Shown here in pieces: positions 1 to 58,195 of a DNA stretch of 64,000 nt. The position numbers were made by a program, and so were the translations under genes. Origin of the DNA: Podarcis filfolensis (taxonomy: Eukaryota); the NCBI GenBank assembly GCA_964270895.1, contig OZ185437.1. One strand, given 5' to 3'. The notes under the pieces are model-generated. The model was not told where the DNA came from and did not search any database. It worked only from the letters and a program-made list of their open reading frames with translations. Numbering within the stretch: position 1 is the stretch's first letter; each line of letters starts with the position of its first letter.

Positions 1-1430
1 TCTTGCTGCACTCTGCACATTGTTTCAGTATGCACAAAGATTAGCATAAAAATAGTGAGGAGCAAGATGCAATAGATGATTCCTAACTTGTATCAATGGA
101 GGTGCATTATAAGTGGTCCATATTTCACAAGCATACAGTAAGGTTGGTAGTGCAATAGTTTTGTAAACAAGCATTTTGGTTTCCCTGCGAATGTACCAGT
201 CCACAAACACACTGCACTTCAATCGGGAGAAAGCTGCACTCGCAGAGCTCAAAGGTTGTTGGATTTTGGCGTCAGTGTCACCCCTTGTGGAAAGATAACT
301 GCCCAGGTGGGGGAAGTGATTGACGCTTTCCAACATTACACCACTGAGTTGGATTTGTAATAATAATAATAATAATAATTTATTATTTGTACCCCGCCCA
401 TCTGGCTGGGTTTCCCCAGCCACTCTGGGCGGCTTCCATAGAAAACCAAAAATACACTAAAGCGCTGCAGAGGCGTTGTTTTATGCTTGTTGGTACAGCG
501 CTTTGGTTTTTTGGATGTTGAGTGATAGGCCAAGCTTTTTATAAGCTTATGTGAAGATATTTAGGATAGTTTGGAGGTCATCCTCTTGAGTGTGCACACG
601 CTATGTTGTCATCAGTATGCTGAAGCTTTATGCAGAAGTTATGGTAACCTTACTCTTTGTTTTCAGCCTACTCAAATTAAAGAGCTTTCCATCTGTCTGG
701 TATGATTTCTATTCTGGTGGGAAGTTTCCCTTCGACAAAGCGTATGGTCATGTCAATGAAAATAATAAATAAAGAGTTGGGGTGATAACACAACCCTGTT
801 TAACACCTGATCCGACTGTGAACGGTTCACTTTGAGAGCAATTATCTGCAATTGTTGCTGTCGTATTATCATGGATGAGCCAAAGGATGTTCAGAAATTC
901 ATCTGGGTAGCCGATTTTAAGGAGGACAGTCCACAGGGCATTACGATTTAGTGTCAAAGGCCTTAGTCAGGTCAGTAAATGCCATATACAGGGATTAGTT
1001 TTGATCTTAGCATTTTTCTGGAAGCTGAGCGGTGAAAATCATGTACACTGTCCCCCTAGAAGGTTGAAAACCATTTTGGGATTCAGGAGGGGTAGCCTCG
1101 GATATTGTTCAGAGACAGTTTGCTAAGATCCTTGCAAGAATTTTGCAGGCTGCAGCTAATAAAGAGATGCTTTGATAGTTTCCGTAATTCGTTCTATCAC
1201 CTTTTTTAAAGAGATTGATAATTTTTGCATCCCTAAAGTCTGCTGGGATCTCTCTCCCAGATTTTTTCGATGAGCTAGTGAAGTTGTTGTGTAAGTTTAG
1301 CTCCGCCCACTTTGAAGACTTCAGCAGGTATCCCATCACATCCGCTGGCTTTGTTGTTTTTCATTTGGTTAATGATAGTCTATGCTTAAGAAACTGTTTT
1401 ACATTTCTAACCACATTATTTAGGCATTGA
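1..1430 (-). mobile_element. Decayed RTE-clade LINE (RTE-1-like, not BovB), RT region
   Basis: Fragmented - strand frames: IPADFRDAKIINLFKKGDR.NYGNY.SISLL, ALW.VL.K.G.P...GVKQGCV, HLGSYLS...ASAAFSRL...TKMLVYK...LLYACE.WT. Frameshifted and interrupted at ~360-457. Confidence 0.88.
360..457 (-). mobile_element. L2-type LINE 3' end with (ATT)n tail nested in the RTE
   Basis: Reverse complement reads gaagccgcccagagtggctggggaaacccagccagatgggcggggtacaaataataa; same tail at 3861, 24634 and 25605. Confidence 0.7.
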
Positions 1431-1563: not shown

Positions 1564-4500
1564 GTGAGTTTTATAACAATATGTAGTATTAACCTTTAGA
1601 TATACTGGTCTACATTTAAAACATTGAACTCCATAGAATTCTGTTCTGAGATGGATTCTACCTTTTATTGTAATAACAGATTCTAACTATTCCTCAGTTT
1701 TAATCATTTATTGTACGAAACAGTATCGTAAGGCATTCAGCTGCAGTCACTGACTGGAATGCAAGGGAAAACAAGCAGAATGCATACTGCATATTGAGTG
1801 AATCAAAGAAATGTAGACTTGGAAGGGACCCAGGGGTCATCTATGCAGGAATCTCAACTAGGAGAAGGACAGCTGACACTAAGAGAGAATTGATTCAAAT
1901 CAACGAGCCTTCCTCATAGCTGCAGCCTGCAGCTTGGTTTTTGTGTGAACTTCAGTCATGTTTGACAACCAGTAATAAGGGTTTTTATAAGCGTTTTGAG
2001 AGCATGTGTGGCAGCTTTATAAAAAAGAAATCCCATGATATTGATAGTATCTTCTTCCAGAAGGGACAGGTTGTGACATGACATGTAGCAGTATAAGTTC
2101 ATCTCCTTATTTTAGGAAGGACACCCATCTTGTAACACAGCATTGCGTTGTGATGATTGAATGTGTATGTCATATTTTAAGTGGCACTTTAAAGCTAGAA
2201 CTCTTAGGTAGAGCCTTTATAGTACTAATATATGAAGGCTGTGGTTGGCTTTGTTCTGCCTTCCGCTGCTCTTATGAGAATGGCCTTGTTATCCCAAGAT
2301 AAAACCTGGGGCTAATAAGGCTGGAAGGGAAACAAAATGGGACCCTGCATAGGTTGATAATGCACCTAGGGTTAGTCACACAGAAACTTGCACAAATGAA
2401 GGGCAGCTTGTAGCAGAATAGCTTTCACTGAAGGTAAAAGGAATGTGAATAGGCAGGGCTGCTACCTGCACAAAGACAGCAACATTTTTCACTCAGCTGA
2501 ATGAGGATTGTAGCCTTGATTATTCCAGTAGGCTTTTCCATAGTTGATTTATTCTTTTCAGATGGTTTCCGTAAGGTAGTCCACGTTGACTCTGGCATTG
2601 TCAAATTGGAAAGAGATGGCCCTGTTGAATTCCAACACCCCTACTTCAAGCAAGGACGGGAAGACTTACTGGAGCACATTAAAAGAAAGGTTAGTGAAAG
2701 GGAGTCTGGAAGCTTTGAACCTTCTGTAAGCACTGACGTAGATCCATGTGAGGGTTTGCTAGGATCTTGCAGATAGTGTAAGTGGGAACAGAAATCTAGA
2801 TTGCAAAAAAGGAACAGTACAATTCAGTTTTACTGAGTACAAAGCAATGCACATGCCAACAAGACTGCCGTGCAGCAGTTCAAAACAACTGCATGCAAGC
2901 CTTCAGTCACATCAAGATCTAGAATTACAGATCAAGGATGGCTTACTGTAACCTAAAATATGCCTTCAACAAAGCGGGATGGCCAGTTCTCTGATCCAAA
3001 GGCAGAAGCGAGTCCTGGACCTATTTTGATCAGTGTAAGGAAGCGCTTCACCAATGAAACAGAAATCCAGGGAGATGTTCAGAGTCTTAGCTTCATTTGG
3101 CACAACTTGAACTATGTCAGATTTCACTTGCTTACCTTCCACACTTTTTCTCCTCCTTTCTACAAACCCCACTTCTTCCATCCCCTGTGCTTGCAAAAAT
3201 TGTCATCTGACCTAATGGAATGTTTGCATTATTTATTTCTTCAGTTGCTACTTATTTGCTATGATACCTGCATAAAGTAGCTTTGGTAAGCATCTGGGTG
3301 AAAAGGGAATTCTCTGTAAGAGATGGAACAAGGTCCTGACTATCCAGCTTGAATATCCCTCCATTATTCTCTTGACCTTTCTGCCCTATAATAATCATAC
3401 ATATGTACATAGCACTTCCCTTTTTATTCCTTCTGAATTATTTGAACGCAGCATAGCCTTTGATTATTTAGTTCATTTTCAGATGGCATATGATCCCTTC
3501 ATGATCTTGCAGATTCCATCCATGTGTACATTTTTGTTAATTGAAAGCAGAAGTACAAAGCTCTGCATGGATTCAGAGCAAAACCTTATTTATCAATTAA
3601 ATAGTCACTACAATCCATATTTTTAAAAGTAATATGTTAACTTAAATTTGTGGTGATAATTCTTACAGGTTTCTTCTTCAAGGCCTGAAGAAAATAAAAT
3701 TCGTCAGGAAGATCTGTCTAAAATCATAAGCAGTGCTCAGAAGGTTCAAAGTAAACAAGAGACTATTGAATCCAGGCTATCTGCTCTGAAGAGGTAAATA
3801 AGATTTCTACCTTGATTTTTTAGGAGGAAGAGTATGAAAGACTACTAGTACATCTAAAAATGTTTTTAGATTGCTGTAAGCTGCCCAGAGTAGCTAGGGA
3901 AACCCAGCCAGATGGGCAGGGTATTTACTATTATTATCATCATCATTATTTATATCATTACTGGTGGGTTTATGGCACCTTTAAGGAAACAGTTGTTTAT
4001 TAAAGCTGGTATTCACATAAGTGTTACTTTGAGTAGACGCATTGAAATTAATGGCCATGACGACGGGCCACTAGGGGCGCATTGGAAGATGGCCGACAAT
4101 ACCATCTCTCCGACCCACACGGGGTAATTAAGAGGCTGTTCTGGGAGTAGGCAGCCTCCCTTGTTGCCCCAAGGAAATGGGGAACACTGCCCTTGCCTGC
4201 TGTGCCCATAAATCACCCCCTAATTTGAAAGAAGGGGGTGAGGGCCCTAGGCAGAATGCCCCCGTGTGGACCTCGGCTCTCCTGGACGCTGTCTCTGATC
4301 GCGCACTAGCTGCAGCAATTTGGAATAATTAATTACAAAAGAAGCAAATGCACATATTTCAAGTGAAGAAGGGGAGTGAAGTCTGCTAATTTAAGTGACC
4401 TCTGCGAAAGAAGACGATGGGATGGAGAAACAGGAATATTTTACGATGAAGATACACCAAAGGCTGGGTATGGTGACAACGGGACTGAATGGGGGGGGGA

Positions 4501-7500
4501 AACTTTTTTACTTTCCTTCTATGTGATTTACAAGAAGCCCTCCTCATTAGAATCGTCAGTTGAACTGACCCAAGCAAGATGATTAAGGTCTGTGTGGAGA
4601 TAAACTTTAACCAAAAGTATGCTTTATGGAGATCGAGAAGCAATAAGGGCTTTTGGAATGGTGCAGCAATTCGGAGTCGCCATCTTGCCAAAGGATTTAT
4701 AGCTGGGAGGAGGAACAGACTTGTCAGACTGCATTCCTGGTGAATCTCCTCAGAGGTTTTGAGAAAGGAGGCAGATTGGTGAAGATTAATGACGCTAAGA
4801 CTGTTTTGATGTATGGAAGTGATGTTATATGGAAAACGTCTGGATATGGCTACTGGATAAAAAAAATAATATCCACGCAGGATTACAAACTGTTCTAACC
4901 AGCTTGTGGAGACTATCAGAGGTCACAAAGAGAAAGGAAAAATATAGGAAAATAACAACAAGAGATGTGGAAAAACAATAAGAAAGGACTGGATAGTACT
5001 GTGAACACCATAAGGTTAGATTTGTGGACATTAAAACAGCAGCAAGTAGCAAGAAGTTGATTGGATCCCCTTCGGAACTTGAAATATGGGTACCCCCAAC
5101 AAAAATTAAAAATTCGGCTGTGTAATTTGGAATTTATGTAATTTGGTTTGATTTGATGTGATTGGTCGGTTAATAAAAAAATATTTTTTTAAAAAAAGAA
5201 ATTAATGGCCATGACTATGGGTCTTCTATTTCAATGGGTTTGTTCTGAGTAAGGCAACTGAGTACACCCTGTAGTGCTGTCTTTGTGTATTTTGTATTAC
5301 AAAGAAGAGGTGTGACAGGTCCCTGTTTCACGGAATTCACAATCTAAAATAGGAGGGGGGGGAATAAGCATGAATATGTGATTATTTTAATTGTATATGT
5401 TTTGGCTTAGTTAACAATAAAGTATAATTACAGTTCCAAGTTTCACTAGGTCAGTTATTGGGATGCGGGTGGCGCTGTGGTTGAAACCACTGAGCTTCTT
5501 GAGCTTGCTGATTGGAAGGTCGGCAGTTCAAAAATGTGCGATGGGGTGAGCTCCCATTGCTCTGTCCTAGCTTCTGCCAACCTAACAGTTGGAAAGCACA
5601 CCAGTGCAAGCAGATAAATAGGTACCGCTGCGGCGGGAAAGTAAACTGTGTTTCTGTGCACTCTGGCTTCTGTCACGGTGTCCTGTTGCACAAGAAGTGG
5701 TTTAGTCATGGTGGCCACATGATCCGGAAAGCTTTCTGTGGACAAACGCTGCCTCCTCAGCCTGAAGCGAGATGAGCACCCCATAGTCACCTTTGACTGG
5801 ACTTAACCGTCCAGGGGTCCTTTAACTTTTTACCTTTATCTAGGTCAGTTAGTAATCCTTATATTGACTGTAAACATTTTGAAACAGAGAAAATGAATCT
5901 CTTTGGCGGGAGGTAGCAGAACTGAGAGCAAAACATCTGCAGCAACAGCAAGTTATTCGAAAGGTAATTATGTTAACTTCTTTCTTCAGAAGAATAATTT
6001 AAAGTCATCTATAAATGAAGTGCAGAATTGGAAGGGAAACTGTAATTTGTGTGTTGTAAAGGGGCAGGGGTTTTAGTGGAAATTGGTAGCTTGAATGGTA
6101 GGTGACTTGCAATAATTCAATAAAGCTTGAAATTATCTTCTCGGAGATCAATTGGATAGTGGGTGGCAAAAAGCTCAGATGATCTGTTTAGGATATGGTA
6201 GCATGAAATGTGAAGGGCATTAATCTAATTTTGTTAAAATTGTATAACAAATGGTTAAGAGATTAAACGCCAGGGATATACACAAAATATAAAACTTGCA
6301 GAACTCCATGTTTTATATTTTGAATGCCTTTACGTTCCATCTCATATTTTTTAAATTGTTTTTAGACAAATCTGATATCTACAACATACAAAAATTAGGC
6401 TGTTTAGGGATTTGCACTATTATCTTTGCATTAGAATGACACCCAGACCTCTAAATCCTTTTGTTCTTAACTTTCCTATTAGGAAGGTGACTCTAAGCCT
6501 TTGATATTTCAGGCTTTAATTCTAGCCTACTTGACTCTGTATAGTTCCATAAAAAATAAAATTGAACTATTGAGTTCAGTTTAACTTGCTCCTAATTGTG
6601 TGTAGGATTTTTCTAAAGGCAACATTCTGTATTTCTCTGCAGATTGTACAGTTCATTGTCACCCTTGTTCAGAATAACCAACTTGTGAGTTTGAAACGAA
6701 AACGGTAAGTATCAGGTTGACGATACTGGAATTGTAACACAGGTTTATTTTGTGGATATATAGTGTTTATAGAAGCATAAGTTTAAATCCTTGTATTTTT
6801 TAGAAACATTTTTTTCTTTTATGATTTAGCCCATTGCTTCTGAATACTAATGGGACACCGAAGTCCAACATATTCCAGCAGATAGTCAAAGAACCAGCAG
6901 AAAACAAACATCATGTGAGTTAATTCTGAAATATACTTAAGGAAAGTATTAAAAAATGGGCAGAATCACTGCTTGGTTGGACAGAGAAAATACAATATTC
7001 CCCATGAAAAAGAGTACAGTAATCATTATTCACATAGTCCTTGCGTTGGCTGTTTTCCTTTATATGGAGTGAAAATAGATCAGGCATATAGCAGTAAGGT
7101 ACCAAGAATGCTGTTGACAGAAAGGGAGGGGCACCAAGTGATGCTTTTCCATAGCATTTACACCCAATACTGCATTGTCAGATTATTATTTAGTTTTGAT
7201 AAGCTAAATGAGGAGGAAACAGGGCAAAATATTCAGCTAAAAAAGCAGGTGTCATTGATGTAGGAGCTATTTTTTCCCTTAAACACAATCTGGAGAAGTA
7301 TTGTCTGTACACATTGTACAGATTTTGCATTCTTTCTGCATCTTCTCCCACAAATTATTTCACTATGTTGTAACTTTTCCATTGATCTTGAACCCTCTAA
7401 GGCCCACATTGGTTGTGAAGGTGAAAATGTATCCCCCCCCCTTTATTGTGTACACACAAACTTCATAATTAGGGTGGCAACTTTTGTTCAGAACTGTACT

Positions 7501-8695: not shown

Positions 8696-11600
8696 ATTGG
8701 AAGTGGAGTGAGTGTAGCTTTGCTGTGGGATGTCATATAACACCTGCTAGAGTCTCCCTGATGTACACTCACAAAAAGCTCCACAGGCATATACTCCCAG
8801 CAGTATAGGATGAAATGGGGTATGTTGGAGCAGATTCCTGGGGGCAGGATTAAAAAAAAAAATTAAAATATGCTACCACCTGCCATCCTAGCCACATTTG
8901 AGTTGGAAGAGGTTACCTCTCTTCTCTTTCCCTGGACCCCAACAAACAGGTACTTCCCTCTTCTACCCTTCCTCCCAAAAAAAGAAATGTACTGGTATTC
9001 TCAGTATTTGAGCATTTAAGGAATTGCAAAACAATAGCATTATGTAGCTCATAACAAGGGCAGCAGTTTAATAGCTGTTCTCTACATTAATATGAGCTGC
9101 AAAGGAAATGTGGTGGGTGTTGGTTCTCTTGAATCACATTTTGTCTATGTATTGCAGTTATAGTCCTGACATTGTAATAGTCGAAGATGACAATGAGGAT
9201 GACTATGCTCCTATAATCCATGAAAATACAACTGCTGAACCAGCCACAATTCCATCCGGTGATTCTGTCAGTCCTTCCCCTTATGGTGCAAGCCCATTAA
9301 TGTCTGGTGCTGTTCAGTTAAACAGCCAGTCAACCTTAACAGCAGAAGACCCAGTCTCAATGATGGATTCAATACTCAGTGAGAATGGAGTGATTTCACA
9401 AAATATCAATCTTCTTGGAAAGTGAGTCACATTCTTCAAATCATCTTTAAAGTTCACACTTGTTCTCTCTTTTTTAAGAGCTTCAAGAAGAGCTACATGA
9501 ATATTTAAATTTGCACTAGTTCTCTGATTTGTTGCTTTCTGAACATGGCATAGTGGGTGAGATTCAAATGTTTCCCAATTCTAAGTGCTGGTGCTGACTC
9601 ATTTAAAGCTTTACACAGTTCAGGACCTCAATACCTTAAGGACCGCCTCTCCCCATACAAACTAACATGGACCCTGCGCTTGTCATCCAAGGCCCTTCTC
9701 TATGTCTCCCTTCCCCAAGATGTTCAGAGAGTAGCAACACAATAGGCCTTTTCAGTGGTGGCTCCCCGTCTGTGGAATGCCGCCCCCAGAAATGCTAGCC
9801 TGGTGCCATCATTACATGTCTTTAGGCACCAAGCAAAAGCATACCTCTTTACCTTTGGGTATTAAATAATCTGTCGCCTGTTAAGGAGAGGGAGACTGTT
9901 ACTATTGTATTTTTTTATATGCTTGGCCAGTAAAGCGAGATGAGCGCCGCAACCCCCGTCTCGTTCGTGACTGGACTTAATTGTCGGGGTCCCTTTACCT
10001 TTAACTAAAATATGTTTTTAATGTTGTACACTGCCCTGGGATCTTTTGAATAAAGGGTGGTATATAAATCAAATTAACATTTCTTCAGTATTCCTCAGTT
10101 TTGGATTCAGTAGTAAAGGTACAGATAGCTTTTAGAGCAGATGCTCCATTTCCTTTTTTAATACTGAATAATGTCATGCTTAGTGTTTACTGAAAGACTA
10201 GTGGTCTTCTGTAGAATCAATGCATGCTTGATCCACTATATACTCCCACTCAACATCATGGATCACTTTCAGATACCTAGAATTACCGTATTTTTCCCTC
10301 TATAACACACAGATTTTTTCTCCTAAAAAGGAAGGGGAAATGTCTGTGCGTGTTATTGAGCGAATGTGTGGTCCCTGGAGCCAAATGGCAAAAAAAATCA
10401 GGCAAAAATCAAATCGCGCGTCTCGGAGAAGGGAAACCTGAAAAGAGGAAGTGGCTGCTTTCCTGCATTCTGCCTCAGGGTCTTACTGCCCACCCTCCTC
10501 TGTTTCCTTGCTGTGTTTGCTCAAACGGAACAAAGAGCAGGGAAAGCCCCTCCCCTCCAGGCAAGCAGAGGGGAAAGCAGAGTGTCGTCTCTGTGCTCCG
10601 GTGCTGCTGAAAACATGCAGGAGGGAGAGAGAGAGCGAGAGAGCGAGAGCGAGAGAGCTGGCTGGCTTGGGTGGGTAGGTGAGGGAAAACTTTTGCCTTC
10701 CTTTCCTCCCTCCCGTTATACCCCTCTCCTGCATTCTTAGCCAGCTGCTTCTCTGCACACCCCTCTCGTGCTCCTTGTCCATTCTGTATTTTTCCTTCCT
10801 TCCCCACTTAAAATGTGGTTAAAAAGCATGGATCCACATGGATCCTCAGGATCTTTGCATTGGGTCACCCCAAATTCACCATCAGATCACATAGCATGTC
10901 CATGGCTACAGCCTGCCCCCCCCCCCCAAATCACGCACCCACTGTTGCCTGGGGCTGCAATGGTGCAAAAACGTGGTTACAAAACATGGATCCTCAGGAT
11001 CTTTGCATTGGGTCACCCCAAATTCACCATCAGATCACATAGCATGTCCATGGCTACAGCCTGCCCCCCCCCAAATCACGCACCCACTGTTGCCTGGGGC
11101 TGCAATGGTGCAAAAACGTGGTTACAAAGCATGGATCCACAGGGATTCTCAGGATTTTTGCATTGGGTCACCCCAAATTCACCATCAGATCACATGTCTG
11201 TGGCCACAGCATGAAGCACAAAAATGATACATCCACTGTTTCATTCAGAATGTTTTTTCCCTTGTTTTCCTCCTCTAAAAACGATGTGCGTGTTATGGTC
11301 AGGTGCGTGTTATCGAGCAAAAAATACGGTATACTCATGTCTGTTGAATTCCAAATAATCCTAGTGGTTGTCCTCTTTACCTTCATTTTTCTTCTGCACT
11401 TTGATTCATTTGTACAATATATTTCTCAGAAAAGCTAGAATTTCATGGAGTTTTCTTGCACTCCTTTAGGGTGGAACTTCTGGATTATCTTGAGAGCATT
11501 GATTGCAGTTTAGAGGATTTCCAGGCCATGTTGTCAGGACGACAGTTCAGCATAGATCCAGATCTCCTGGTTGATGTAAATATTTACACTATATATTTTT

Positions 11601-13149
11601 TTTACTTCTATTTTCCTCACCGATTTGGCTTTACAAAGATTTTGTGTAAGAAAAATACATTTGCATTTTTTTAATGTTATACCTTAAAAGGTCTATATTA
11701 ACAACAGCTTGAGACTGCAGTTTCAGAGAGCAGCAGAATAGTAGTTTGTGCTTGAGGATTTGTGCAGAACATTTCTATTTGTGGCTATTTCAGGCACAAA
11801 AGATTAGTTTGGTTTATAAGTCACCCAATTTATATCTAGAATATAGAATTTTAAAACTTGGTGTACATTTTGTCTTGTCCAGCTTTTTTCAAGTTCCGTG
11901 CAGATGAATCCTACAGGTCATATCAATAGTACAAAAGTAAGTTTTAAAGTAGCACAGCAGTGGGAAATACGGTGTAATGTCAATGTCTAATCCAGTTGCA
12001 TAGCATGTTAATATTTGTTTTAACATTTTGTGTAGCTTAACAAGGCTGATGTTGACACATTATTTAAAGATGCAGCTGTTTTCCTTTTTGTGCTTTCCAG
12101 ATTTTTTTTCTGCATTTTGAAAAATTACACATGTGCATCTTAAGTTTTCAAGTTCTATATTGGGGGGCATCACATGCTGGCCAGAACATCAGTTTAACAC
12201 ATCAGTATTTTTAAAAGTTATAATCAAAGTAGATGTAGCATTCAAAAGAGGGCGAAAAGCACAGGCTAAGAACTGGTTTTGAAATGGGAGATTTGCATCA
12301 TTTTGAAATGTATTCTCCTTATTTTAGACATGATTTCTAGAGTAAAGTTTGAATGTGACTGGGTGGATATACCCATGGTGACAGTCTAGATTTCTAACAC
12401 TCCTGTGTCCCAGGTGCTAGATAAGTTCCTGAACATTTGCTTGTAGCAGTTATCTTCTAGACAAATGTTTTCTCTGTTCCTAAAAAAAATTAGTACGAAG
12501 TCATCTGATTTTTGTAACCATGCTTGCTTTTAAGGTGGAGACAAAGGGAATTGAAACTATGAAGACTAATAGTGCTCAACCATCTACACAAGATGTGCCT
12601 AATTCTGACCCCAAATCAGGTGGATATGCAAGTATTCTTAGTTTCAGAAATGTAGATTGGGTATAATTTAACCTGCATTCATAAATACCCTTATTTTAGA
12701 CACAAAATGAATAAAATAGTTAACATATACCCAGTATGTTTGGAAAGTGAGTTGTAGTTGTGCTGTGCATTGCACAAGTTTCTCTTCATTTTTTAGCCTT
12801 TTCTATAGGAATATAGAGCAGTTGAGTAATTATTTTGGTTTGGTTTGTTTCTTGCCCTGCAGATAAACAGCTCATTCAATATACTGCCTTTCCCCTACTT
12901 GCATTCCTTGATGGAAATCCAGGCTCAGTGGAGAATGCAAATATGACACCTGAATCAGTATCTTCTGTGGATAAACCAATAGAAGTGGATGAACTCCTGG
13001 AAAGTGGTCTGGATCCTCAACCAACCCAAAGCAAACTGGTTCGTCTGGAGCCACTGACAGAAGCAGAAGCTAGTGAAGCTACACTATTTTATTTGTGTGA
13101 ACTTGCTCCTGTGCCAATGGACACTGATATGCCACTGCTGAACAACTAA
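1455..13149 (+). CDS. HSF2: Heat shock factor 2, exons 2-13 (5'-partial): join(1455..1563,2562..2689,3669..3793,5888..5963,6643..6704,6830..6914,7747..7892,9158..9421,11470..11575,11883..11936,12535..12619,12863..13149)
   Basis: All junctions are GT-AG with consistent phases; 1527 nt = 508 aa plus stop. Translation shows the HSF DNA-binding domain ([19 protein letters not shown]), HR-A/B, HR-C and the HSF2 C-terminus ([20 protein letters not shown]). Confidence 0.97.
1800..1860 (-). mobile_element. CR1-like LINE 3'-end fragment
   Basis: gaatc..agaa.tgtaga.ttggaagggaccc...ggtcatcta pattern; similar pieces at ~37005-37040 and ~56335-56390. Confidence 0.5.
2562..2689 (+). CDS. HSF2: HSF2 exon 3 ([42 protein letters not shown])
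   Basis: ttttcag|AT ... AAG|gttagt; 128 bp. Confidence 0.97.
3669..3793 (+). CDS. HSF2: HSF2 exon 4 ([41 protein letters not shown])
   Basis: ttacag|GTT ... GAG|gtaaat; 125 bp. Confidence 0.96.
3861..3950 (+). mobile_element. L2-type LINE 3' tail
   Basis: tgtaagctgcccagagtagctagggaaacccagccagatgggcagggtat followed by (ATT/ATC)n. Confidence 0.65.
4062..5197 (+). mobile_element. Non-coding retroposed element with L1-type insertion hallmarks
   Basis: 18-bp perfect TSD GAAATTAATGGCCATGAC (4044-4061, 5198-5215); AATAAA at 5172-5177 and A-rich tail; TT/GAAA target; AAGATGGCCG at 4086-4095. Confidence 0.85.
5458..5839 (+). mobile_element. Sauria SINE (Squam1), full length
   Basis: tRNA-like head, Sauria core, ggggtccttta..tacctttat tail; 12-bp TSD CTAGGTCAGTTA (5446-5457, 5840-5851). 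Confidence 0.9.
5888..5963 (+). CDS. HSF2: HSF2 exon 5 ([25 protein letters not shown])
   Basis: aacag|A ... AAG|gtaatt; 76 bp. Confidence 0.96.
6643..6704 (+). CDS. HSF2: HSF2 exon 6 ([20 protein letters not shown])
   Basis: ctgcag|ATT ... CG|gtaagt; 62 bp. Confidence 0.96.
6830..6914 (+). CDS. HSF2: HSF2 exon 7 ([28 protein letters not shown])
   Basis: tttag|C ... CAT|gtgagt; 85 bp. Confidence 0.95.
7747..7892 (+). CDS. HSF2: HSF2 exon 8 ([27 protein letters not shown]...)
   Basis: ggcag|GTA ... AA|gtaaga; 146 bp. Confidence 0.95.
8108..8697 (+). mobile_element. L2 LINE 3' part with (ATT)n/(GTT)n tail
   Basis: ORF2 C-terminal relic ([14 protein letters not shown]...[14 protein letters not shown]) and gggcagggtataaataaa end. 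Confidence 0.75.
9158..9421 (+). CDS. HSF2: HSF2 exon 9 ([18 protein letters not shown]...SQNINLLG)
   Basis: ttgcag|T ... AA|gtgagt; 264 bp. Confidence 0.95.
9597..10078 (+). mobile_element. L2 LINE 3' part interrupted by a Sauria SINE 3' fragment
   Basis: [31 protein letters not shown], then [12 protein letters not shown]; tail ggtatataaat at ~10060. Confidence 0.75.
9924..10003 (+). mobile_element. Sauria SINE 3' fragment
   Basis: ggccagtaaagcgagatgagcgccgcaacccc...ggggtccctttaccttta. Confidence 0.8.
10286..11329. mobile_element. Tc1/mariner-superfamily (Tc2/pogo-like) MITE carrying a minisatellite
   Basis: TIRs (ta)CCGTATTTTTCCCTCTATAACAC / GTGTTATCGAGCAAAAAATACGG(ta), 3 mismatches; TA TSD. 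Confidence 0.82.
10815..11195. repeat. Minisatellite, ~145-148-bp unit x ~2.4
   Basis: Units start at 10841, 10989 and ~11134 (gatcctcaggatctttgcattgggtcaccccaaattcaccatcagatcacat...). Confidence 0.9.
11470..11575 (+). CDS. HSF2: HSF2 exon 10, HR-C ([35 protein letters not shown])
   Basis: tttag|G ... GAT|gtaaat; 106 bp. Confidence 0.97.
11883..11936 (+). CDS. HSF2: HSF2 exon 11, 54-nt alpha/beta cassette ([18 protein letters not shown])
   Basis: gtccag|CTT ... AAA|gtaagt; phase 0-0, 18 aa. Confidence 0.93.
12535..12619 (+). CDS. HSF2: HSF2 exon 12 ([28 protein letters not shown])
   Basis: tttaag|GTG ... TCAG|gtggat; 85 bp, phase fits exon 13. Confidence 0.88.
12863..13149 (+). CDS. HSF2: HSF2 exon 13, terminal ([19 protein letters not shown]...DMPLLNN*)
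   Basis: ctgcag|AT; TAA at 13147-13149. Confidence 0.97.
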
Positions 13150-35710: not shown

Positions 35711-36449
35711 CAGTGGTTTTCCGTGGCACCCTGGGGTGCCTTGAATGGGGTGCAGTGAACAACACTGGTCTTGACACTGTCCTTCTTTCCTTCCCTTCCT
35801 CCTCTGATGCCTTCTCACATCTCCCAAAGGCTTGTACACCTGTTAGTTGCAGCAGCCCTGGCTACAAGCCCAGCAGACGAATGGTGCCTCTGGGGCTGGT
35901 ATGGGGCTGCTGGCTGCCATGAGCTGAGGTGGCCTCGGAATAAGTAAGCAAGCGGGCAGTGGAACCCAGCCAGCCAGTCCACCAACCCTTGCTGTTGGGA
36001 ATGGACAGGCAAGTCCCAGGCCCCTGTGGGGCAGTGTGAGGAGGCACCTCTCTTGGGGGGAGGGGGCAGGTCAGAGACCAGGGGTGGCAGCAGTAGCTGC
36101 CTGGAGGAATCCCAAGGAGAGGGGAGAGGAGAAGTGCAGTGGTGTAGCGTGGGGGGTGCAGGGGGGGCCGGCCGCACTGGGTGCAACATCTGGGGGTTAG
36201 GGTTAGGGGCGCAAATCCACAGGTTAGGGGGCGCAAATCCACGGGTTAGGGGGCGCAAATTACTTGCCTTGCCCTGGGTGCTGACAACCCACGCTACGCC
36301 ACTGGAGAAGAGGCTGAGGAAACACTCCACAAGGGAGGGTAAGAGGCTGCTAGCTCTGCAAGCAAGGGATCCTGAGCCCCACAGGAGTGCCACAGAAAGA
36401 ATGTAGTTGGTCAAGGGAGCCTTGGACTCAAAAAGGTTGAAAACCTCTG
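35711..36449. mobile_element. hAT-like non-autonomous element hosting a nested MITE
   Basis: Ends cagtggtttt / aaggttgaaaacctctg; GC-rich body; no TSD found. Confidence 0.45.
36137..36304. mobile_element. hAT MITE with three ~22-bp internal repeats
   Basis: 17-bp TIRs CAGTGGTGTAGCGTGGG / CCCACGCTACGCCACTG (1 mismatch); 8-bp TSD GAGAAGTG / GAGAAGAG. Confidence 0.85.
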
Positions 36450-37619
36450 CATTATTATGTAGAGACGGAGGTGTGGATGGAGGAAGCAGCTAATTTGGGG
36501 AGTGTGTATTTGAACAGATGCTTGAATAAAGGAAATGTAATCTCTTCCTCTTAGAGCTGTCAACTTTGTTTAGCTGGCTCTGCTCTTCTCCCTGCTGCTG
36601 TTAGCCTAACACCCAGAGCTGCTAGATCAAAGCAGAAATCATTCCAGGATCCTGGCTTCTTTGCAAATTAAGGGTGTGATGATCCTATGCATTCACTGAG
36701 ATTTACTTTTCAGAGAGAAATGGAACAAGCTGCAGCTTGGCTGCAGGTAAAGTATGGTACTTTAGAATGCATGGACTCTGCCTGGGTAGCTGACAGCCAG
36801 CGGCATTTATTCTGCCTCCTAGGAGTGTTTGCTCTTTGCCTTTGCTTATGCTCTGCTTATTATTATTTGATAATAAAGCAAATATTACAAGTCTCCAGTA
36901 TTCTCTACTCCAAATGATATTAAGGCTGCAATCTCACACGCACCTGGGGGGAGGAATCCTATTGAACTCAGTGTTGCTTACTTCTAGGGAGATATAGAAC
37001 TGCAGAATCATAGCATTGCAGAGTTGGAAGGGACCCCTGTTTATATTAAACTCACATTGTTTAAATAAAAACCAACATAGTATTTTATTGTACGGTATAG
37101 CATTTTAATCCAACAACTTATAAAAACTGGAAGTGGCAAGACCTATCTTTAAACAACTGCTCTTCATTCCCACTCATGCAAGATCAAATGCTTCTTTATC
37201 TAAGATGAAGATTTGCAGCATCTAAATATACGTACAAAGTTACAAAATCTAAAAAGCTCCAGAGAAAAAGGTGGGATATATATAAATATAGCAACAAACT
37301 TTAAAACTTTATGACTTTCCCCCATTTCTTTTGTTCTACTCATATGAAAATCTAATTAAGGGGAACACACCCAACCCTACTGCCCTGGTATGCATGCCTA
37401 CTCGAGTCCTATTGATTCATCGGGACCTACTCTCAGATAACTGCGTCTATGATTGCAGCCTAACTGGGGACCGAGTGAAAGTCCTCATCGGGACTTGTCC
37501 TCATCCCTATTAGCAGAGATGTCGCCGCTATGGGAAGAAATCCTGCGGGCTAGCTCAGATTATGCCCTGATCTTTGAACCATTAATTGCACGCGTGCTTT
37601 CAAGTACATGCACTTCCAC

Positions 37620-38720
37620 GAACACTGACGGAGCCTCCCACTGATCCAATCCCTCTCATTGGACATCAGCAGCTCCTCTCCTATCACAGCGCCAAGTACA
37701 CGATCGAGCAGCGCGCTGTAAATCTCCTTAGATCCCTTGCTCGATCCCGCCTACAAACCAACCGGGATTTATTAATCTTCTCGACAGCTTGCGCGGTGGG
37801 GGGAGAGGGGGGGTGGGAAGAAGGGGGGAAAAGGAGAAAACTGGGATCCAAACAAAACGCAAGAGGGCAAGAAACCTCTGGATCGCTTTGCCCCTTGCGT
37901 CAGGAGAGCCGGATCCTTGGGGTTTTACGGCGGCCGAGCTGGGAGCTGAAGGCAGGGCTGCCGTCCCTTCCCTTCTGGGGACCGGTAGGAAGGATTTCAT
38001 AGGATCTTCCCCTGCCGAAGCCGCAGCGAGCGCCGCGCGAGTTCCCGCCTCCTGCCTTCGCTCATTCATTCCCGCCGCCGCCGCCGCCAGCAGCTGCTGC
38101 TCCATTATGAGCGGCTCCTTCCTGGTTCCTCGTTGCCAGACGCGCGACTTGGACGGCGAGCCTGAGGCGGCGGGAGCCGGGAAGAGGAGGCGGCAGCAGC
38201 AGGAGAAGCCCGGCGAGAAGCCCTCCTTCCCCGCGCCCGGCGCCTCTCGGGGTTCCTGCGCCGCGTAAAGAAGGAAACCCAAACAACCCGCGACGGGTAA
38301 GGACGGGTCGCCGCGAGGGGCTGCTGGGCTCAAAGTTTCCGCCGCGGTCCGGGCGCTTTGGGTTTGTTTCTCTCCCCCCCCACCCCCACCCCAACACCTC
38401 CCTCCCCTCGCGATCTGCCGTCGAGCTTATGCAATAGAGCCAGTCTTGTCCCAGGAGAAAATGGAAGCGCCTTCGGGATTTGTCGCGCTTTTGGCCCCCT
38501 AAAGCGCGCCAGCCAAAGGGTCGGCGCGTCTGGTTCGAGCCCACCCGGGGATGGTTTGTGGGCAGGATTTCTGCATGGCAGGGGGTTGGACTAGATGATC
38601 CTCGGGGACGCCGTCCAACTCTACGATGCTTTGATTCTAAGCCCCGGACAGCAAGGGCTGCCTTGTTTTGCTCGTTTCCAGGGGGAACTCTCCGAAGTAA
38701 TGGTTTGTGGGGGGGGGGTT
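37620..38720 (+). promoter_or_regulatory. CpG-island promoter, probably PKIB
   Basis: CpG/GC-rich ~1 kb; inverted CCAAT/ATTGG pair at 37646-37662; TGCGTCA at 37896-37902; donor CGG|GTAAGG at 38297. Identity rests on HSF2-SERINC1-PKIB synteny only. Confidence 0.65.
38061..38296 (+). other. PKIB: Putative first (5'UTR) exon of PKIB; start approximate
   Basis: Inr-like CTCATTC at 38061, (GCC)5 tract and strong donor at 38297; no PKI pseudosubstrate coding seen. Confidence 0.45.
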
Positions 38721-39107
38721 CTGTCCGTCGGGATGGGGGTGAAAGTGGGGAAGTATCGAACTTGCTTTTTCTTCTCAAAAGCGTGGGAGTTTGGTACAGG
38801 AGCAAATTGGGTGAGGGGCTGTCCCCGCTTTTGCTTCAAGCACGTCCTGGTGCTGTTTGATACTTGCTCTTGAAAGTCTCCTTTGCCCAAGTTGTGCGCA
38901 CGTGTGAATGTTGGTGATTCGTGATAGGAAGCGGACAAGAATCTGGTGTATATGTACGCGTGTGTGTGTGTGTGTATTCTAGCTAGTGGAGGGATTATAT
39001 CTGCAGGTGTAAATATCAACAAGTGCCCGCACTCCCCAGCCAGCAGGTGGGCAGTTCAGGACTGCAATCTTGTACACACTTACTGCTTAGTAAGTCCCGT
39101 TGAACTT

Positions 39108-46247: not shown

Positions 46248-46474
46248 CAGTGGTACCTCGGGTTACATATGCTTCAGGTTACAGACTCCGCTAACCCAGA
46301 AATAGTGCTTCAGGTTAAGAACTTTGCTTCAGGATGAGAACAGAAATTGTGCTCTGGCGGCGCAGTGGCAGCAGGAGGCCCCCATTAGCTAAAGTGGTGC
46401 TTCAGGTTAAGAACAGTTTCAGGTTAAGTACGGACCTCCGGAACGAATTAAGTACTTAACCCGAGGTACCACTG
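46248..46474 (+). mobile_element. Tc1/mariner (Tigger-like) MITE, copy A
   Basis: Perfect 18-bp TIR CAGTGGTACCTCGGGTTA; TA TSD. Confidence 0.92.
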
Positions 46475-46496
46475 TAAATGGGCTTGGACACTCAAA

Positions 46497-52213: not shown

Positions 52214-52432
52214 CAGTTGGGTTACAGATGCTTCAGGTTACAGACTCTACTAACCCAGAAGTAGTACCTCGGGTTAAGAACTTTGCTTCAGGATGAGAAC
52301 AGAAATCGTGCTCTGGTGGCGCAGCAGCAGCGGGAGGCCCCATTAGCTAAAGTGGTACCTCAGGTTAAGAACAGTTTCAGGTTAAGAACGGACCTCCGGA
52401 ACAAATTAAGTTCTTAACCCGAGGTACCACTG
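52214..52432 (+). mobile_element. Tigger-like MITE, copy B
   Basis: Same family as 46248; left TIR partly deleted; TA flanks. Confidence 0.9.
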
Positions 52433-53336
52433 TAGTGCATTTGTGGTGGATGTATACTGGACCATCCAGACATAATTTTTCAATTTTCAATTGGGTTTTA
52501 TATGCAATTTGATTGTAGCAAGACCTCTCCGTGGTTTACAAGATATATTAAAAGTGTCAATGAAAACAGTTTAAAACATCTGAAAATAATTAAAGTGAAG
52601 GAGATAAAACACGTCAACAGCTATTTGTCTTTGTTCAGGCTTGCCTATACAAAAATGGTTTAAACAGGCACTGGAAAGAGTACTGATGTTGATCGGCAAA
52701 GTACTGTATCTTAAAGATGGATTTCTTGCAACTTCATTAGTTCTGTGATGCTTCCCAAAAGTTTTTGCGTTATTGCTGTCTGGTGGAGGGGCACTCTTGC
52801 ACTACAGTGAAATAAAAGGGATGTATGAAGGGCTCTTCAGTTTGCAGTGGGGGGGGGCAACATTGGAGAAGCCTGAACGAACCAGGTGAGTCTTATTAAT
52901 TTCTGTTAGTTTTAACCTTTGATCTTCAGTGGCAAGAGCTTGGGAAACAATAATGCTTGCAGATACAGAGGATTGCCCCACTCTGGCAGTCTGCAGAAAG
53001 TATTGAGTATATATGCTGTTCCATATTGCATATATTTGGGGGGGGGGGAGGAGGTCTCATTTCCTGGCCTAACCATGGCACAAATGGGAACTCTGAGTTA
53101 GCAGGTGCTCTGCTCGCAGCAGACTAAGGTAGTCTTTGGAGTCTGTCTTGGTCTTAGAGAACCTTTCAGCAGAATGGTGTGCTTGGGAAACTGACTGGGA
53201 CTCAGATCAAGATGGTTTTATTGTAGTTCCACTTTAGGTTAACCTTGCCACACCAAACCTTATGGGTAGTATTGAAGATTGGAGAGTGGGAAGAAGGATA
53301 CAGGTATGTACTGTGAGAAAACTGCAGAACAGGTTT

Positions 53337-53376: not shown

Positions 53377-53626
53377 AAAATGGTTGTGTATCTGTGGTAA
53401 CCAACATGGTTGCTTCTGGATGTGGTGGAGTTGAACCCCCATCAGCCTTATCCAACATGGCCAGTGGCTGGGATAAGAGTTGTAATCCAGCGACATTGAG
53501 AGTGTGCCATATTTGCTACCCCTGCTACTTGAAGGATGTTGTTATAGCCCTCAAATCTACCAGTTGTCCTTTTATTCTACCCACTGAATCTGCACAATGA
53601 GATTATTTGGGGACCTAGTCCAGTGT

Positions 53627-53849
53627 GAAAGCACGTCAAAGTGCAAGTAGATAAATAGGGACCGAATGGTGGGAGGTTTCCGTGTGCTGCTCTGGTTTGC
53701 CAGGAGCGGCTTAGTCATGCTTGCCACATGACCCGGAAGCTGTCTGCGGACAAACGCCGGCTCCCTCGGCCTATAGAGCCAGATGAACGTGCAACCCCAG
53801 AGTCGGTCACGACTGGACCTAATGGTCAGGGGTCCCTTTACCTTTACCT
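53627..53849 (+). mobile_element. Sauria SINE, 5'-truncated
   Basis: 11-bp TSD TAGTCCAGTGT (53616-53626, 53850-53860). Confidence 0.9.
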
Positions 53850-55440: not shown

Positions 55441-55567
55441 GGGTAGGGACCCTTCAGATGTTACTGGACTGCAACCCCCATCAGCCCCAGCCAACTTGTC
55501 CTATGATCAGGGATGATGGGAGTTGTAGTCCATCAGCATCTGGAAGGCCACAGGTTCCCCACTCCTG
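55441..55567. mobile_element. Palindromic hAT-like mini element
   Basis: Self-complementary cagatgttactggactgcaacccccatc / gatgggagttgtagtccatcagcatctg; end aggttccccactcctg. Confidence 0.6.
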
Positions 55568-55613
55568 CAGTAAGCAATAAATCATGGCTTAGCACTGGCA
55601 GCATGTACTAGTG

Positions 55614-55966
55614 GTCTGAAGCACTGATCCTCTTGGGCTTGCCAATCAGAAGGTCGGTGGTTCGAATCCCCACGACGGGGTGAGCTCCTGTTGCTCGGTC
55701 CCTGCTCCTGCCAACCTAGCAGTTCAAAAGCACGCCCAAAAGTGCAAGTAGACAAATAGGTACCGCGTTTCCATGCGGTGCTCTGGTTATGGTGTTCTGT
55801 TGCGCCAGAAGCGGCTTAGTCATGCTGGCCACATGATCCGGAAAAACTGTCTGCGGACAAACACCGGCTCCTTTGGCCTGTAAAGCGAGATGAGCGCCAC
55901 AACCCCAGAGTTGTCTACGACTGGACTTAACTGTCAGGGGTCCTTTACCTTTTACCTTTTTTTTTT
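55614..55966 (+). mobile_element. Sauria SINE, slightly 5'-truncated
   Basis: B box GGTTCGAATCC; 8-bp TSD TACTAGTG (55606-55613, 55967-55974). Confidence 0.9.
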
Positions 55967-57689: not shown

Positions 57690-58195
57690 ACAAGGGCTGT
57701 GCTGTGTTTTCTAGATGATTCAGAAACTTCAACTGGTCCAAAATCCAGTAGCCAGATTACTGGCTGGGATTCCGTTTAGATCTCGCATATCCCCCATTTT
57801 AAAACAGGTGCCCTGGTTCCAAGTTTGGTTCCAGACCCAATTCAAGGTGGTCACATTAGGGTTTAAAGACCTAAATGACGAAGGCCCCAAATACCTGAAA
57901 GACTACTTGCTTCCCTGCAGACCTCTTTGGATGTTAGGATCAGTGGAGATCTCTTGGTTTCACCATCCTCAGAAGCTCCTGGAACAGAAACTTGAGAGAG
58001 GGCATTCTCTGTGGCAACCCCTAAGTTGTAGAACTCCCTCCCCACAGAGGTGCATCTTGCACCTCTTTACCTTGGCTGTTGATAGCTGCAATGTATCTTT
58101 TCAGGATCTCCCCCCACTCCGCTTACTTCTGTGATCATAAGTTGTTTTAAACTGATTTTCACATTGTGTTTTAATAGTCATAAGCCACCTTGCAG
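57690..58195 (+). mobile_element. L2 LINE 3' portion
   Basis: KLQLVQNPVARLL.G...ISPILKQVPW..V.FQ.QFKV..L.FK.LN..GPKYLKDYL. Confidence 0.8.

What the first reader, a model, noticed from the sequence alone, without database searches (positions are those of the whole stretch)
4044..5215. 1.14-kb non-coding, L1-mobilised retroposon with 5' YY1 motif, poly(A) signal and 18-bp TSD
Seen: a perfect 18-bp TSD, a TT/GAAA target, a CpG-bearing 5' end with AAGATGGCCG 24 bp inside, a second antisense YY1-type motif CGCCATCTT (4678-4686), AATAAA (5172) and an A-rich tail. There is no long ORF (max 81 aa on +) and no recognisable ORF1/ORF2 motif. Established: long TSDs, TT/AAAA-like sites and poly(A) tails mark L1 target-primed reverse transcription, and human L1 has a 5' YY1 site for Pol II initiation. 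Inference: this is a full-length, Pol II-driven non-autonomous L1 partner (neither a tRNA SINE nor a coding retrocopy), or a retrocopied lncRNA. The perfect TSD suggests it is young. It sits in sense within HSF2 intron 4, where it could act as a promoter or premature poly(A) site.
Basis: partly seen in the sequence, partly recalled or inferred. Interest (0 to 1): 0.75.

Follow-up and report, generated by a model that had tools for sequence, protein, structure and literature searches.

The report
Young non-coding retroposon in lizard HSF2
A 1.1-kb gene-less jumping element was pasted fairly recently into an intron of a wall lizard's heat-shock factor gene, with the marks of L1-type copying. It seems to belong to a small, undescribed lizard repeat family; that is interesting to transposon specialists but otherwise ordinary.

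Summary
A perfect 18-bp target-site duplication (4044-4061 / 5198-5215) brackets a 1136-bp insert (4062-5197). The target is TT/GAAA. AAGATGGCCG lies 24 nt inside, CGCCATCTT is at 4678, AATAAA is at 5172, and the A tail is only 7 nt. The insert lies in sense in the intron between HSF exons 3669-3793 and 5888-5963.

It is not a tRNA, 7SL or 5S SINE, and it is not a coding retrocopy. It shows no recognisable L1 ORF1 or ORF2 remnant. Pfam, Rfam, ARAGORN and an HMMER search of 1.84 billion proteins found nothing.

It is not unique. A sense reading frame matches a cluster of three Logan-assembly ORF variants at 96% identity. These sit on eight contigs of 972-1261 nt and differ from this copy by frameshifting indels and CpG-decay substitutions. 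That points to a young multi-copy family, an expressed one, or both.

This scan had already flagged at least five other elements of about 1.1-1.2 kb with a "CTCF + YY1 head" on other DNA of the same wall-lizard genome. I could not check those notes. In this copy the CTCF core is one G short and fails the consensus.

L1 dependence, Pol II and YY1 promoter function, copy number and any effect on HSF2 remain inferred.

The parts
4044..4061 (+). 5' copy of the 18-bp target-site duplication GAAATTAATGGCCATGAC, preceded by TT
4062..5197 (+). 1136-bp non-coding retroposed insert. The first 270 nt are GC-rich and carry CpGs; the last 400 nt are A/G-rich (39% A).
4068..4080 (+). CTCF-like near-motif CCACTAGGGGCGC. 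It is one G short of the core CCASYAGRKGGCRS and fails it ungapped in this copy.
4086..4095 (+). YY1-type box AAGATGGCCG, 24 nt inside the 5' end
4579..4898 (+). Stretch matching the 108-aa Logan ORF P0001/P0003. In this copy it is broken into two frames (4579-4740 and 4647-4895) by a 4-nt indel near 4672, and it also lacks one codon.
4678..4686 (-). Second YY1-type core, CGCCATCTT, in antisense
5172..5177 (+). AATAAA polyadenylation hexamer
5175..5197 (+). 3' end A7-TA-T7-A7. The terminal A7 (5191-5197) is all that is left of the poly(A) tail.
5198..5215 (+). 3' copy of the 18-bp target-site duplication
3669..3793 (+). Upstream HSF2 exon ('exon 4'; [16 protein letters not shown]...SALK), with acceptor AG and donor GT
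5888..5963 (+). Downstream HSF2 exon ('exon 5'; [16 protein letters not shown]...VIRK)

Best explanation
This is one copy of a young, lizard-restricted, ORF-less retroposon family about 1.1 kb long. A polyadenylated RNA ended about 13-20 nt after the AATAAA at 5172. It was most likely made by Pol II, because the six internal T-runs would stop Pol III. A LINE reverse transcriptase copied it in trans by target-primed reverse transcription. The bottom strand was nicked at TT/GAAA, and a second cut 18 bp away produced the TSD.

The endonuclease site, the TSD length and the A tail point to an L1-clade driver rather than Bov-B, CR1 or L2. The YY1-type box at +25 may allow copies to start transcription at their own first base, as in L1. 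That would let a retrocopy act as a new source.

Shown: the insertion anatomy, the lack of coding or RNA-family homology, and the existence of other diverged copies. Inferred: the L1 driver, Pol II/YY1 initiation, and family size.
For: - Anatomy: perfect 18-bp TSD, TT/GAAA target, AATAAA and terminal A-run.
- No homology: nothing in Pfam, Rfam or ARAGORN.
- Pol III unlikely: six sense T>=4 runs.
- Other copies: the sense frame 4647-4895 hits the Logan cluster P0001 at E 1e-40 and 96% identity. The cluster holds three distinct ORF variants on 8 contigs of 972-1261 nt, which is about the element's length.
- The variants differ from each other and from this copy by different frameshifting indels. 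There are therefore at least four sequence versions, more than two alleles of a single locus would give.
- Two of the substitutions in this copy are CGG to TGG or CAG, i.e. CpG decay, as expected for a methylated dead copy (codon inference).
- Control: 7 longer single-locus ORFs of the window and 9 element or junction ORFs are absent from the same collection. The Logan contigs therefore look like collapsed repeats or transcripts rather than ordinary genomic coverage.
- The Bov-B signature (Tn-TA target, (CAA)n tail in Podarcis muralis; PMC13295347) is not present.
- Leads only: earlier notes list five other elements of about 1.1-1.2 kb with the same kind of head in this genome.
Against: - No second copy is in the 64-kb window, and I could not read the DNA of any other copy. 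Individual TSDs, shared 5' ends and copy number are therefore unverified.
- The Logan variants could in principle be orthologous loci or transcripts of a single parent gene in several Podarcis species.
- The exact-match control is weak, because gene callers may choose other starts or skip non-coding ORFs.
- The tail is only A7.
- No L1 sequence was available for comparison.
- YY1 function rests on a 10-mer.
Confidence: 0.65

Rival explanations
1. It is a processed retrocopy of a spliced, single-copy host lncRNA or micro-ORF mRNA. The Logan contigs of about 1 kb would be transcripts of that parent gene, or of its orthologues in several Podarcis species. The other look-alikes in the genome would be further retrocopies of the same abundant RNA, with no retrocopy ever acting as a source.
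For: The Logan contig lengths of 972-1261 nt would fit a transcript of about 1.1 kb. An intact 108-aa ORF exists in two variants. There is no homology to L1 or to SINE heads. The TSD, AATAAA and A tail are exactly what processed pseudogenes show.
Against: The 108-aa ORF has no relative among 1.84 billion representatives, no Pfam family, and a low protein-likeness score. Two of the four versions are frameshifted at different places. If the earlier notes are right, at least six full-length copies in about 40 Mb of scanned genome is a density more typical of a retroposon family than of one gene's pseudogenes (unverified).
Confidence: 0.22
2. It is a plain internally deleted L1, or a HAL1-like derivative. 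The L1 5' UTR head, including its YY1 box, would be joined to the L1 3' UTR and tail, with both ORFs lost.
For: The YY1 box near the 5' end and the A-rich, purine-skewed 3' half (39% A) resemble an L1 sense strand.
Against: No Transposase_22, endonuclease or RT signal appears in any frame at E<=1. HMMER of the longest family ORF finds no LINE protein. The window holds no L1-like sequence that matches the element. For the related 1.7-kb family, an earlier follow-up also reported that descent from L1 is not shown (unverified).
Confidence: 0.1
3. It is a chance direct repeat flanking ordinary intron sequence, or a DNA-level duplication, and not a mobile element.
For: None beyond the shortness of the A tail.
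Against: Only about 0.007 isolated 18-mer pairs are expected per window. The 3' repeat copy abuts AATAAA plus an A-run. Near-identical sequence occurs on independent Logan contigs.
Confidence: 0.02

Closest known systems
SVA / LAVA-type composite retroposons of hominoids (non-autonomous, Pol II, L1-mobilised)
   Same: It is 1-2 kb long and non-coding, has an AATAAA with an A tail and L1-type TSDs, and carries no tRNA, 7SL or 5S head.
   Different: It has no hexamer repeat, VNTR, Alu-like or LTR-derived module. Tandem Repeats Finder shows only a short (ATTTG)n. The lineage is unrelated. SVA has no L1-like YY1 box at its start.
L1 5' UTR with YY1 initiator box, and HAL1 (half-L1)
   Same: An AAGATGGCC-type YY1 box lies within about 25 nt of the first base. 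The sense strand is A-rich, and the integration signature is the same.
   Different: No ORF1 or ORF2 remnant is detectable. Homology to lizard L1 UTRs could not be tested.
Processed pseudogenes and lncRNA retrocopies
   Same: The same TPRT anatomy: TSD, poly(A) signal and tail, and no introns.
   Different: There is no identifiable parent and no conserved ORF. Several diverged copies exist.
CTCF-site-bearing SINEs (rodent B2 and similar)
   Same: According to earlier notes of this scan, sister copies carry a CTCF core in the head.
   Different: It is not a Pol III or tRNA-derived SINE. In this copy the CTCF core is not met. No binding data exist.
The 1.7-kb non-coding Podarcis retroposon family noted earlier by this scan (s1-279433)
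   Same: Same genome, an ORF-less element with a TSD and an A tail, and a presumed L1 partner.
   Different: Its length differs. Any sequence relation to the 1.1-kb element is unknown, because I could not read its DNA.

Membership tests
L1-type TPRT insertion | Target-site duplication of about 7-20 bp flanking the insert | tested here: met
   18/18 identical, 4044-4061 and 5198-5215
L1-type TPRT insertion | Endonuclease target resembling 5'-TT|AAAA | tested here: met
   CATT|GAAATT, one deviation from the consensus. The consensus is as cited in PMC13295347.
L1-type TPRT insertion | 3' poly(A) tail directly abutting the TSD | tested here: inconclusive
   Only A7 remains (5191-5197), preceded by A7-TA-T7 and AATAAA
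Multi-copy non-autonomous retroposon family | Many dispersed copies sharing the same 5' end, each with its own TSD | tested here: inconclusive
   Three further ORF variants sit on 8 Logan contigs of about 1 kb. Five look-alikes in earlier notes are unverified.
Pol III SINE (tRNA, 7SL or 5S head) | tRNA-, 7SL- or 5S-derived 5' module, and no internal Pol III terminators | tested here: not met
   ARAGORN gave 0 and Rfam gave 0 relevant hits. There are six T>=4 runs on the sense strand.
Processed pseudogene of a protein-coding gene | Reading frame homologous to a known protein | tested here: not met
   Pfam found nothing above cut-off. The word searches gave no protein other than the family's own ORF. 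HMMER against 1.84e9 representatives found only the query itself.
Internally deleted L1 / HAL1 | Remnant of ORF1 (Transposase_22) or ORF2 (EN/RT) | tested here: not met
Internally deleted L1 / HAL1 | 5' and 3' UTR homology to an autonomous L1 of the same genome | not testable with these tools
   There is no L1 in the window and no access to lizard genome DNA
Bov-B/RTE partner | Tn-TA target signature and a (CAA)n-type 3' microsatellite | tested here: not met
   The TSD starts with G after TT, and the tail is an A-run. The signature is as described in PMC13295347.
CTCF-site-bearing retroposon | Intact CTCF core CCASYAGRKGGCRS in the element | tested here: not met
   The head CCACTAGGGGCGC has G4 where the core needs one more G. 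No hit with <=2 mismatches lies in 3900-5300. The consensus was recalled from memory.
SVA-like composite | Internal VNTR or simple-repeat modules | tested here: not met
   Tandem Repeats Finder shows only (ATTTG)4.6 at 5141-5163

The most novel reading that the evidence does not exclude
Lacertid lizards harbour an active, ORF-less, Pol II-transcribed retroposon family that is not derived from a tRNA, 7SL or 5S gene or from recognisable L1 coding sequence. Its first 35 nt combine a CTCF core with an L1-style YY1 initiator. Each new insertion would then seed a portable promoter/insulator module. That would be an independent reptilian counterpart of the mammalian SINE-borne CTCF waves, here dropped in sense into HSF2.
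Probability: 0.12. Interest if true: 0.7.

Novelty: new member of a known kind. Interest (0 to 1): 0.4.

Why it matters
Squamates keep many L1 lineages active, yet their non-autonomous L1 passengers are barely described. A young ORF-less passenger of 1.1 kb would be a useful marker. It could be scored for presence or absence across Podarcis populations. It would also be a natural test of what an RNA needs in order to hijack a non-mammalian L1.

If the head motifs prove functional, the family would be a source of new promoters or insulators. For HSF2, a sense-oriented AATAAA-bearing insert now makes up 55% of a 2.1-kb intron and could affect processing, but nothing here shows that it does.

Tried and rejected
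I did not try again, so no reads were laid.
The DNA of the Logan contigs and the orthologous HSF2 introns of other lizards could therefore not be fetched.
- A scan of JGI metagenome contigs for the head pattern, and a second one with P0001, found nothing.
- The search of earlier findings by sequence returned nothing.
- Word searches with the 101-aa antisense ORF and the 66-aa sense frame found nothing.
- The idea that '[11 protein letters not shown]' in the family ORF is a LINE RT thumb remnant was dropped. Full HMMER found no LINE protein.
- The ESM Atlas gave only sub-threshold chance hits.
- Three literature searches turned up no described lacertid family of this kind.
- The spliced HSF2 model was checked exon by exon, by reference. 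The joined protein was not built or searched.
- Exons were first located with short peptide words recalled from memory and then confirmed by Pfam.
- The window has no N runs, and no contig that I took for human was met.
Full report
**What is in the sequence**

The window reads CATT|GAAATTAATGGCCATGAC|GACGGGCC... at 4040-4069 and ...TTTTTTTAAAAAAA|GAAATTAATGGCCATGAC|TATGG at 5184-5220. The 18-mer is identical in both places.

I scanned the window for exact direct repeats of 14 nt or more, spaced 200-7000 nt apart. Every other pair of 18 nt or more belongs to longer repeated elements or to (GT)n. By my own arithmetic, about 0.007 isolated 18-mer pairs are expected by chance. The insert is therefore 4062-5197, 1136 bp.

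- AAGATGGCCG begins 24 nt inside the insert, at 4086.
- CGCCATCTT lies at 4678.
- AATAAA lies at 5172.
- The YY1 8-mer core occurs three times in 64 kb on both strands, and two of those are in this 1.1 kb.

The terminal A-run is only seven bases and follows a palindromic A7-TA-T7. Just upstream of the YY1 box sits CCACTAGGGGCGC (4068-4080). That is one G short of the CTCF core and does not pass the consensus in this copy (consensus recalled from memory).

**Host gene**

Peptide words located HSF exons on the + strand. Pfam confirmed them:
- HSF_DNA-bind on 1452-1559 (E 1.7e-13) and on 2603-2692.
- Vert_HS_TF on 12859-13146 (E 8.9e-15).

The exons flanking the insert are 3669-3793 and 5888-5963, with canonical AG/GT sites and a shared AG|A codon. 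The intron is 2094 nt, and the insertion plus one TSD copy accounts for 1154 nt of it. The element is in sense.

Exon 1 is not in the window. 'Intron 4' therefore assumes the mammalian exon count. The assignment to HSF2 rather than another HSF rests on my recollection of the protein and on the neighbouring PKIB note. I searched exons separately, by reference, and did not build the joined protein.

**What it is not**

- Pol III SINE: ARAGORN finds no tRNA-like module. Rfam finds nothing relevant at E<=1 locally, and nothing at gathering score window-wide. Six T>=4 runs on the sense strand would terminate Pol III.
- Coding retrocopy or L1 remnant: ten reading-frame pieces from both strands hit no Pfam family near its cut-off, so there is no L1 ORF1, endonuclease or RT.
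- SVA-like composite: no VNTR-like array is present.
- Bov-B partner: the Bov-B signature described for Podarcis muralis (Tn-TA target, (CAA)n tail; PMC13295347) is absent. The same paper's L1 consensus TT|AAAA fits with one deviation.
- The element matches nothing else in the window, which also holds no L1 to compare.

**Other copies**

The word search with the 83-codon sense frame 4647-4895 returned one cluster from Logan assemblies. Its representative is P0001, 108 aa, 96% identical, E 1e-40. The cluster has three distinct members on eight contigs whose longest lengths are 1037, 1261 and 972 nt.

Aligned to this copy, the members compare as follows:
- P0001 and P0003 fuse two frames that are separate here (4579-4740 and 4647-4895). 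From the DNA, the window copy lacks 4 nt near 4672 and one codon further on.
- P0002 enters the shared frame from a third frame, through a different indel near 4652.

So at least four sequence versions exist, separated by different indels. That is more than two alleles of one locus can give.

Two substitutions in the window copy are W for R and Q for R. At the codon level these are CGG to TGG and CGG to CAG. That is CpG decay in this copy, so it is the derived, probably methylated, dead one. This step is inference from codons.

As a control, I looked up nine exact ORFs of the element and its 5' junction, and seven longer single-locus ATG ORFs (110-148 aa) from elsewhere in the window. None is in the same collection. 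Ordinary genomic ORFs of this lizard are thus not represented, while this element's ORF is, on contigs about as long as the element. That is what collapsed repeats or abundant transcripts look like. The control is imperfect, because gene callers choose their own starts and may skip non-coding ORFs.

**Is the 108-aa ORF a gene?**

Probably not.
- It has no Pfam family.
- Only itself was found among 1.84 billion representatives by full HMMER.
- Its protein-likeness score is below threshold, with chance-level Atlas hits.
- Two of the four versions are frameshifted.

**Earlier notes of this scan (leads, not evidence)**

The genome is a wall lizard, Podarcis. Five other notes on other pieces of it describe non-coding, TSD-flanked, polyadenylated elements of 1089-1190 letters. 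Three mention a 'CTCF plus YY1' head: s1-302378, s1-307128 and s1-287843. The other two are s1-287812 and s1-302390.

The one follow-up (s1-302378) could not confirm other copies. The head in my window (GGCCACTAGGGG-CGC...AAGATGGCC) fits that description, apart from the shorter G-run. The scan has therefore found this kind of element before on other DNA.

If all six are one family, six full-length copies in about 40 Mb scanned would extrapolate to a few hundred per genome. That is my arithmetic on unverified notes. A separate 1.7-kb ORF-less family was reported at about a thousand copies (s1-279433). Its relation to this element is unknown.

**Mechanism I consider most likely, and its rivals**

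A polyadenylated Pol II transcript of a source copy is used in trans by an L1-clade ORF2 protein. It nicks at TT/GAAA, primes on the A tail, and makes a second cut 18 bp away. The YY1 box at +25 may fix initiation at the element's first base, so that retrocopies carry their own start.

- Only the integration anatomy is shown.
- Confidence in L1-type retroposition is about 0.9.
- Confidence in membership of a multi-copy family is about 0.65-0.75.
- Confidence in YY1-driven initiation is about 0.35.

The rivals:
- A retrocopy of a host lncRNA, about 0.22.
- An ORF-stripped L1, about 0.10. This was not testable, for lack of lizard L1 UTRs.
- Chance, about 0.02.

Effects on HSF2 (premature polyadenylation at 5172, or an intronic promoter) are possible but untested. 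The window holds 61 AATAAA hexamers on the + strand, so one more in an intron is unremarkable.

**Limits**

- Two metagenome scans were blank.
- Three literature searches found no described family of this kind. Automatic repeat libraries (Dfam, Repbase) could not be consulted and may already hold it as an unclassified model.

**Verdict**

It is most likely a new member of a known kind, a non-autonomous L1-type passenger, of moderate interest.

Noticed in passing
window 46255-46480 and 52215-52440: Two copies, about 93% identical, of an interspersed element of about 215 bp. It is bounded by inverted termini TACAGTGGTACCTCGGGTTA...TAACCCGAGGTACCACTGTA and has internal GGTTAAGAAC repeats. It looks like a MITE-type DNA transposon.
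   Followed up: partly
window 10768-11214: A duplication with a 303-bp period. Exact blocks of 39 and 16 nt lie at 10823/11126 and 10854/11157. It gives a repeated peptide ([21 protein letters not shown]...) in a GC-rich stretch inside the HSF2 gene region.
   Followed up: no
window 25-423 (-) and 57715-58134 (+): ORFs that look like C-terminal pieces of non-L1 LINE reverse transcriptases (...LPTLLYACEIWTTY...LQLVQNPVARLL...ISPILKQVPW...). They have no Pfam hit.
   Followed up: partly
window about 35800-39000: A GC-rich, CpG-island-like block with many overlapping spurious ORFs on both strands. It may be the promoter region of the gene between HSF2 and PKIB.
   Followed up: no
window 53434-53760 and 55473-55850: Another pair of dispersed repeat copies about 2.1 kb apart, sharing exact blocks of 14-17 nt.
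   Followed up: no
window 4353-4375 and 5066-5088: A 23-nt inverted repeat, 87% complementary, inside the element with arms 690 nt apart. It could be a long-range RNA pairing or chance.
   Followed up: no
window 4062-4069 and 5216-5223: The first bases of the insert (GACGGGCC) resemble the bases just after the 3' TSD copy (TATGGGTC) at 5 of 8 positions. This may be microhomology at the 5' junction or chance.
   Followed up: no
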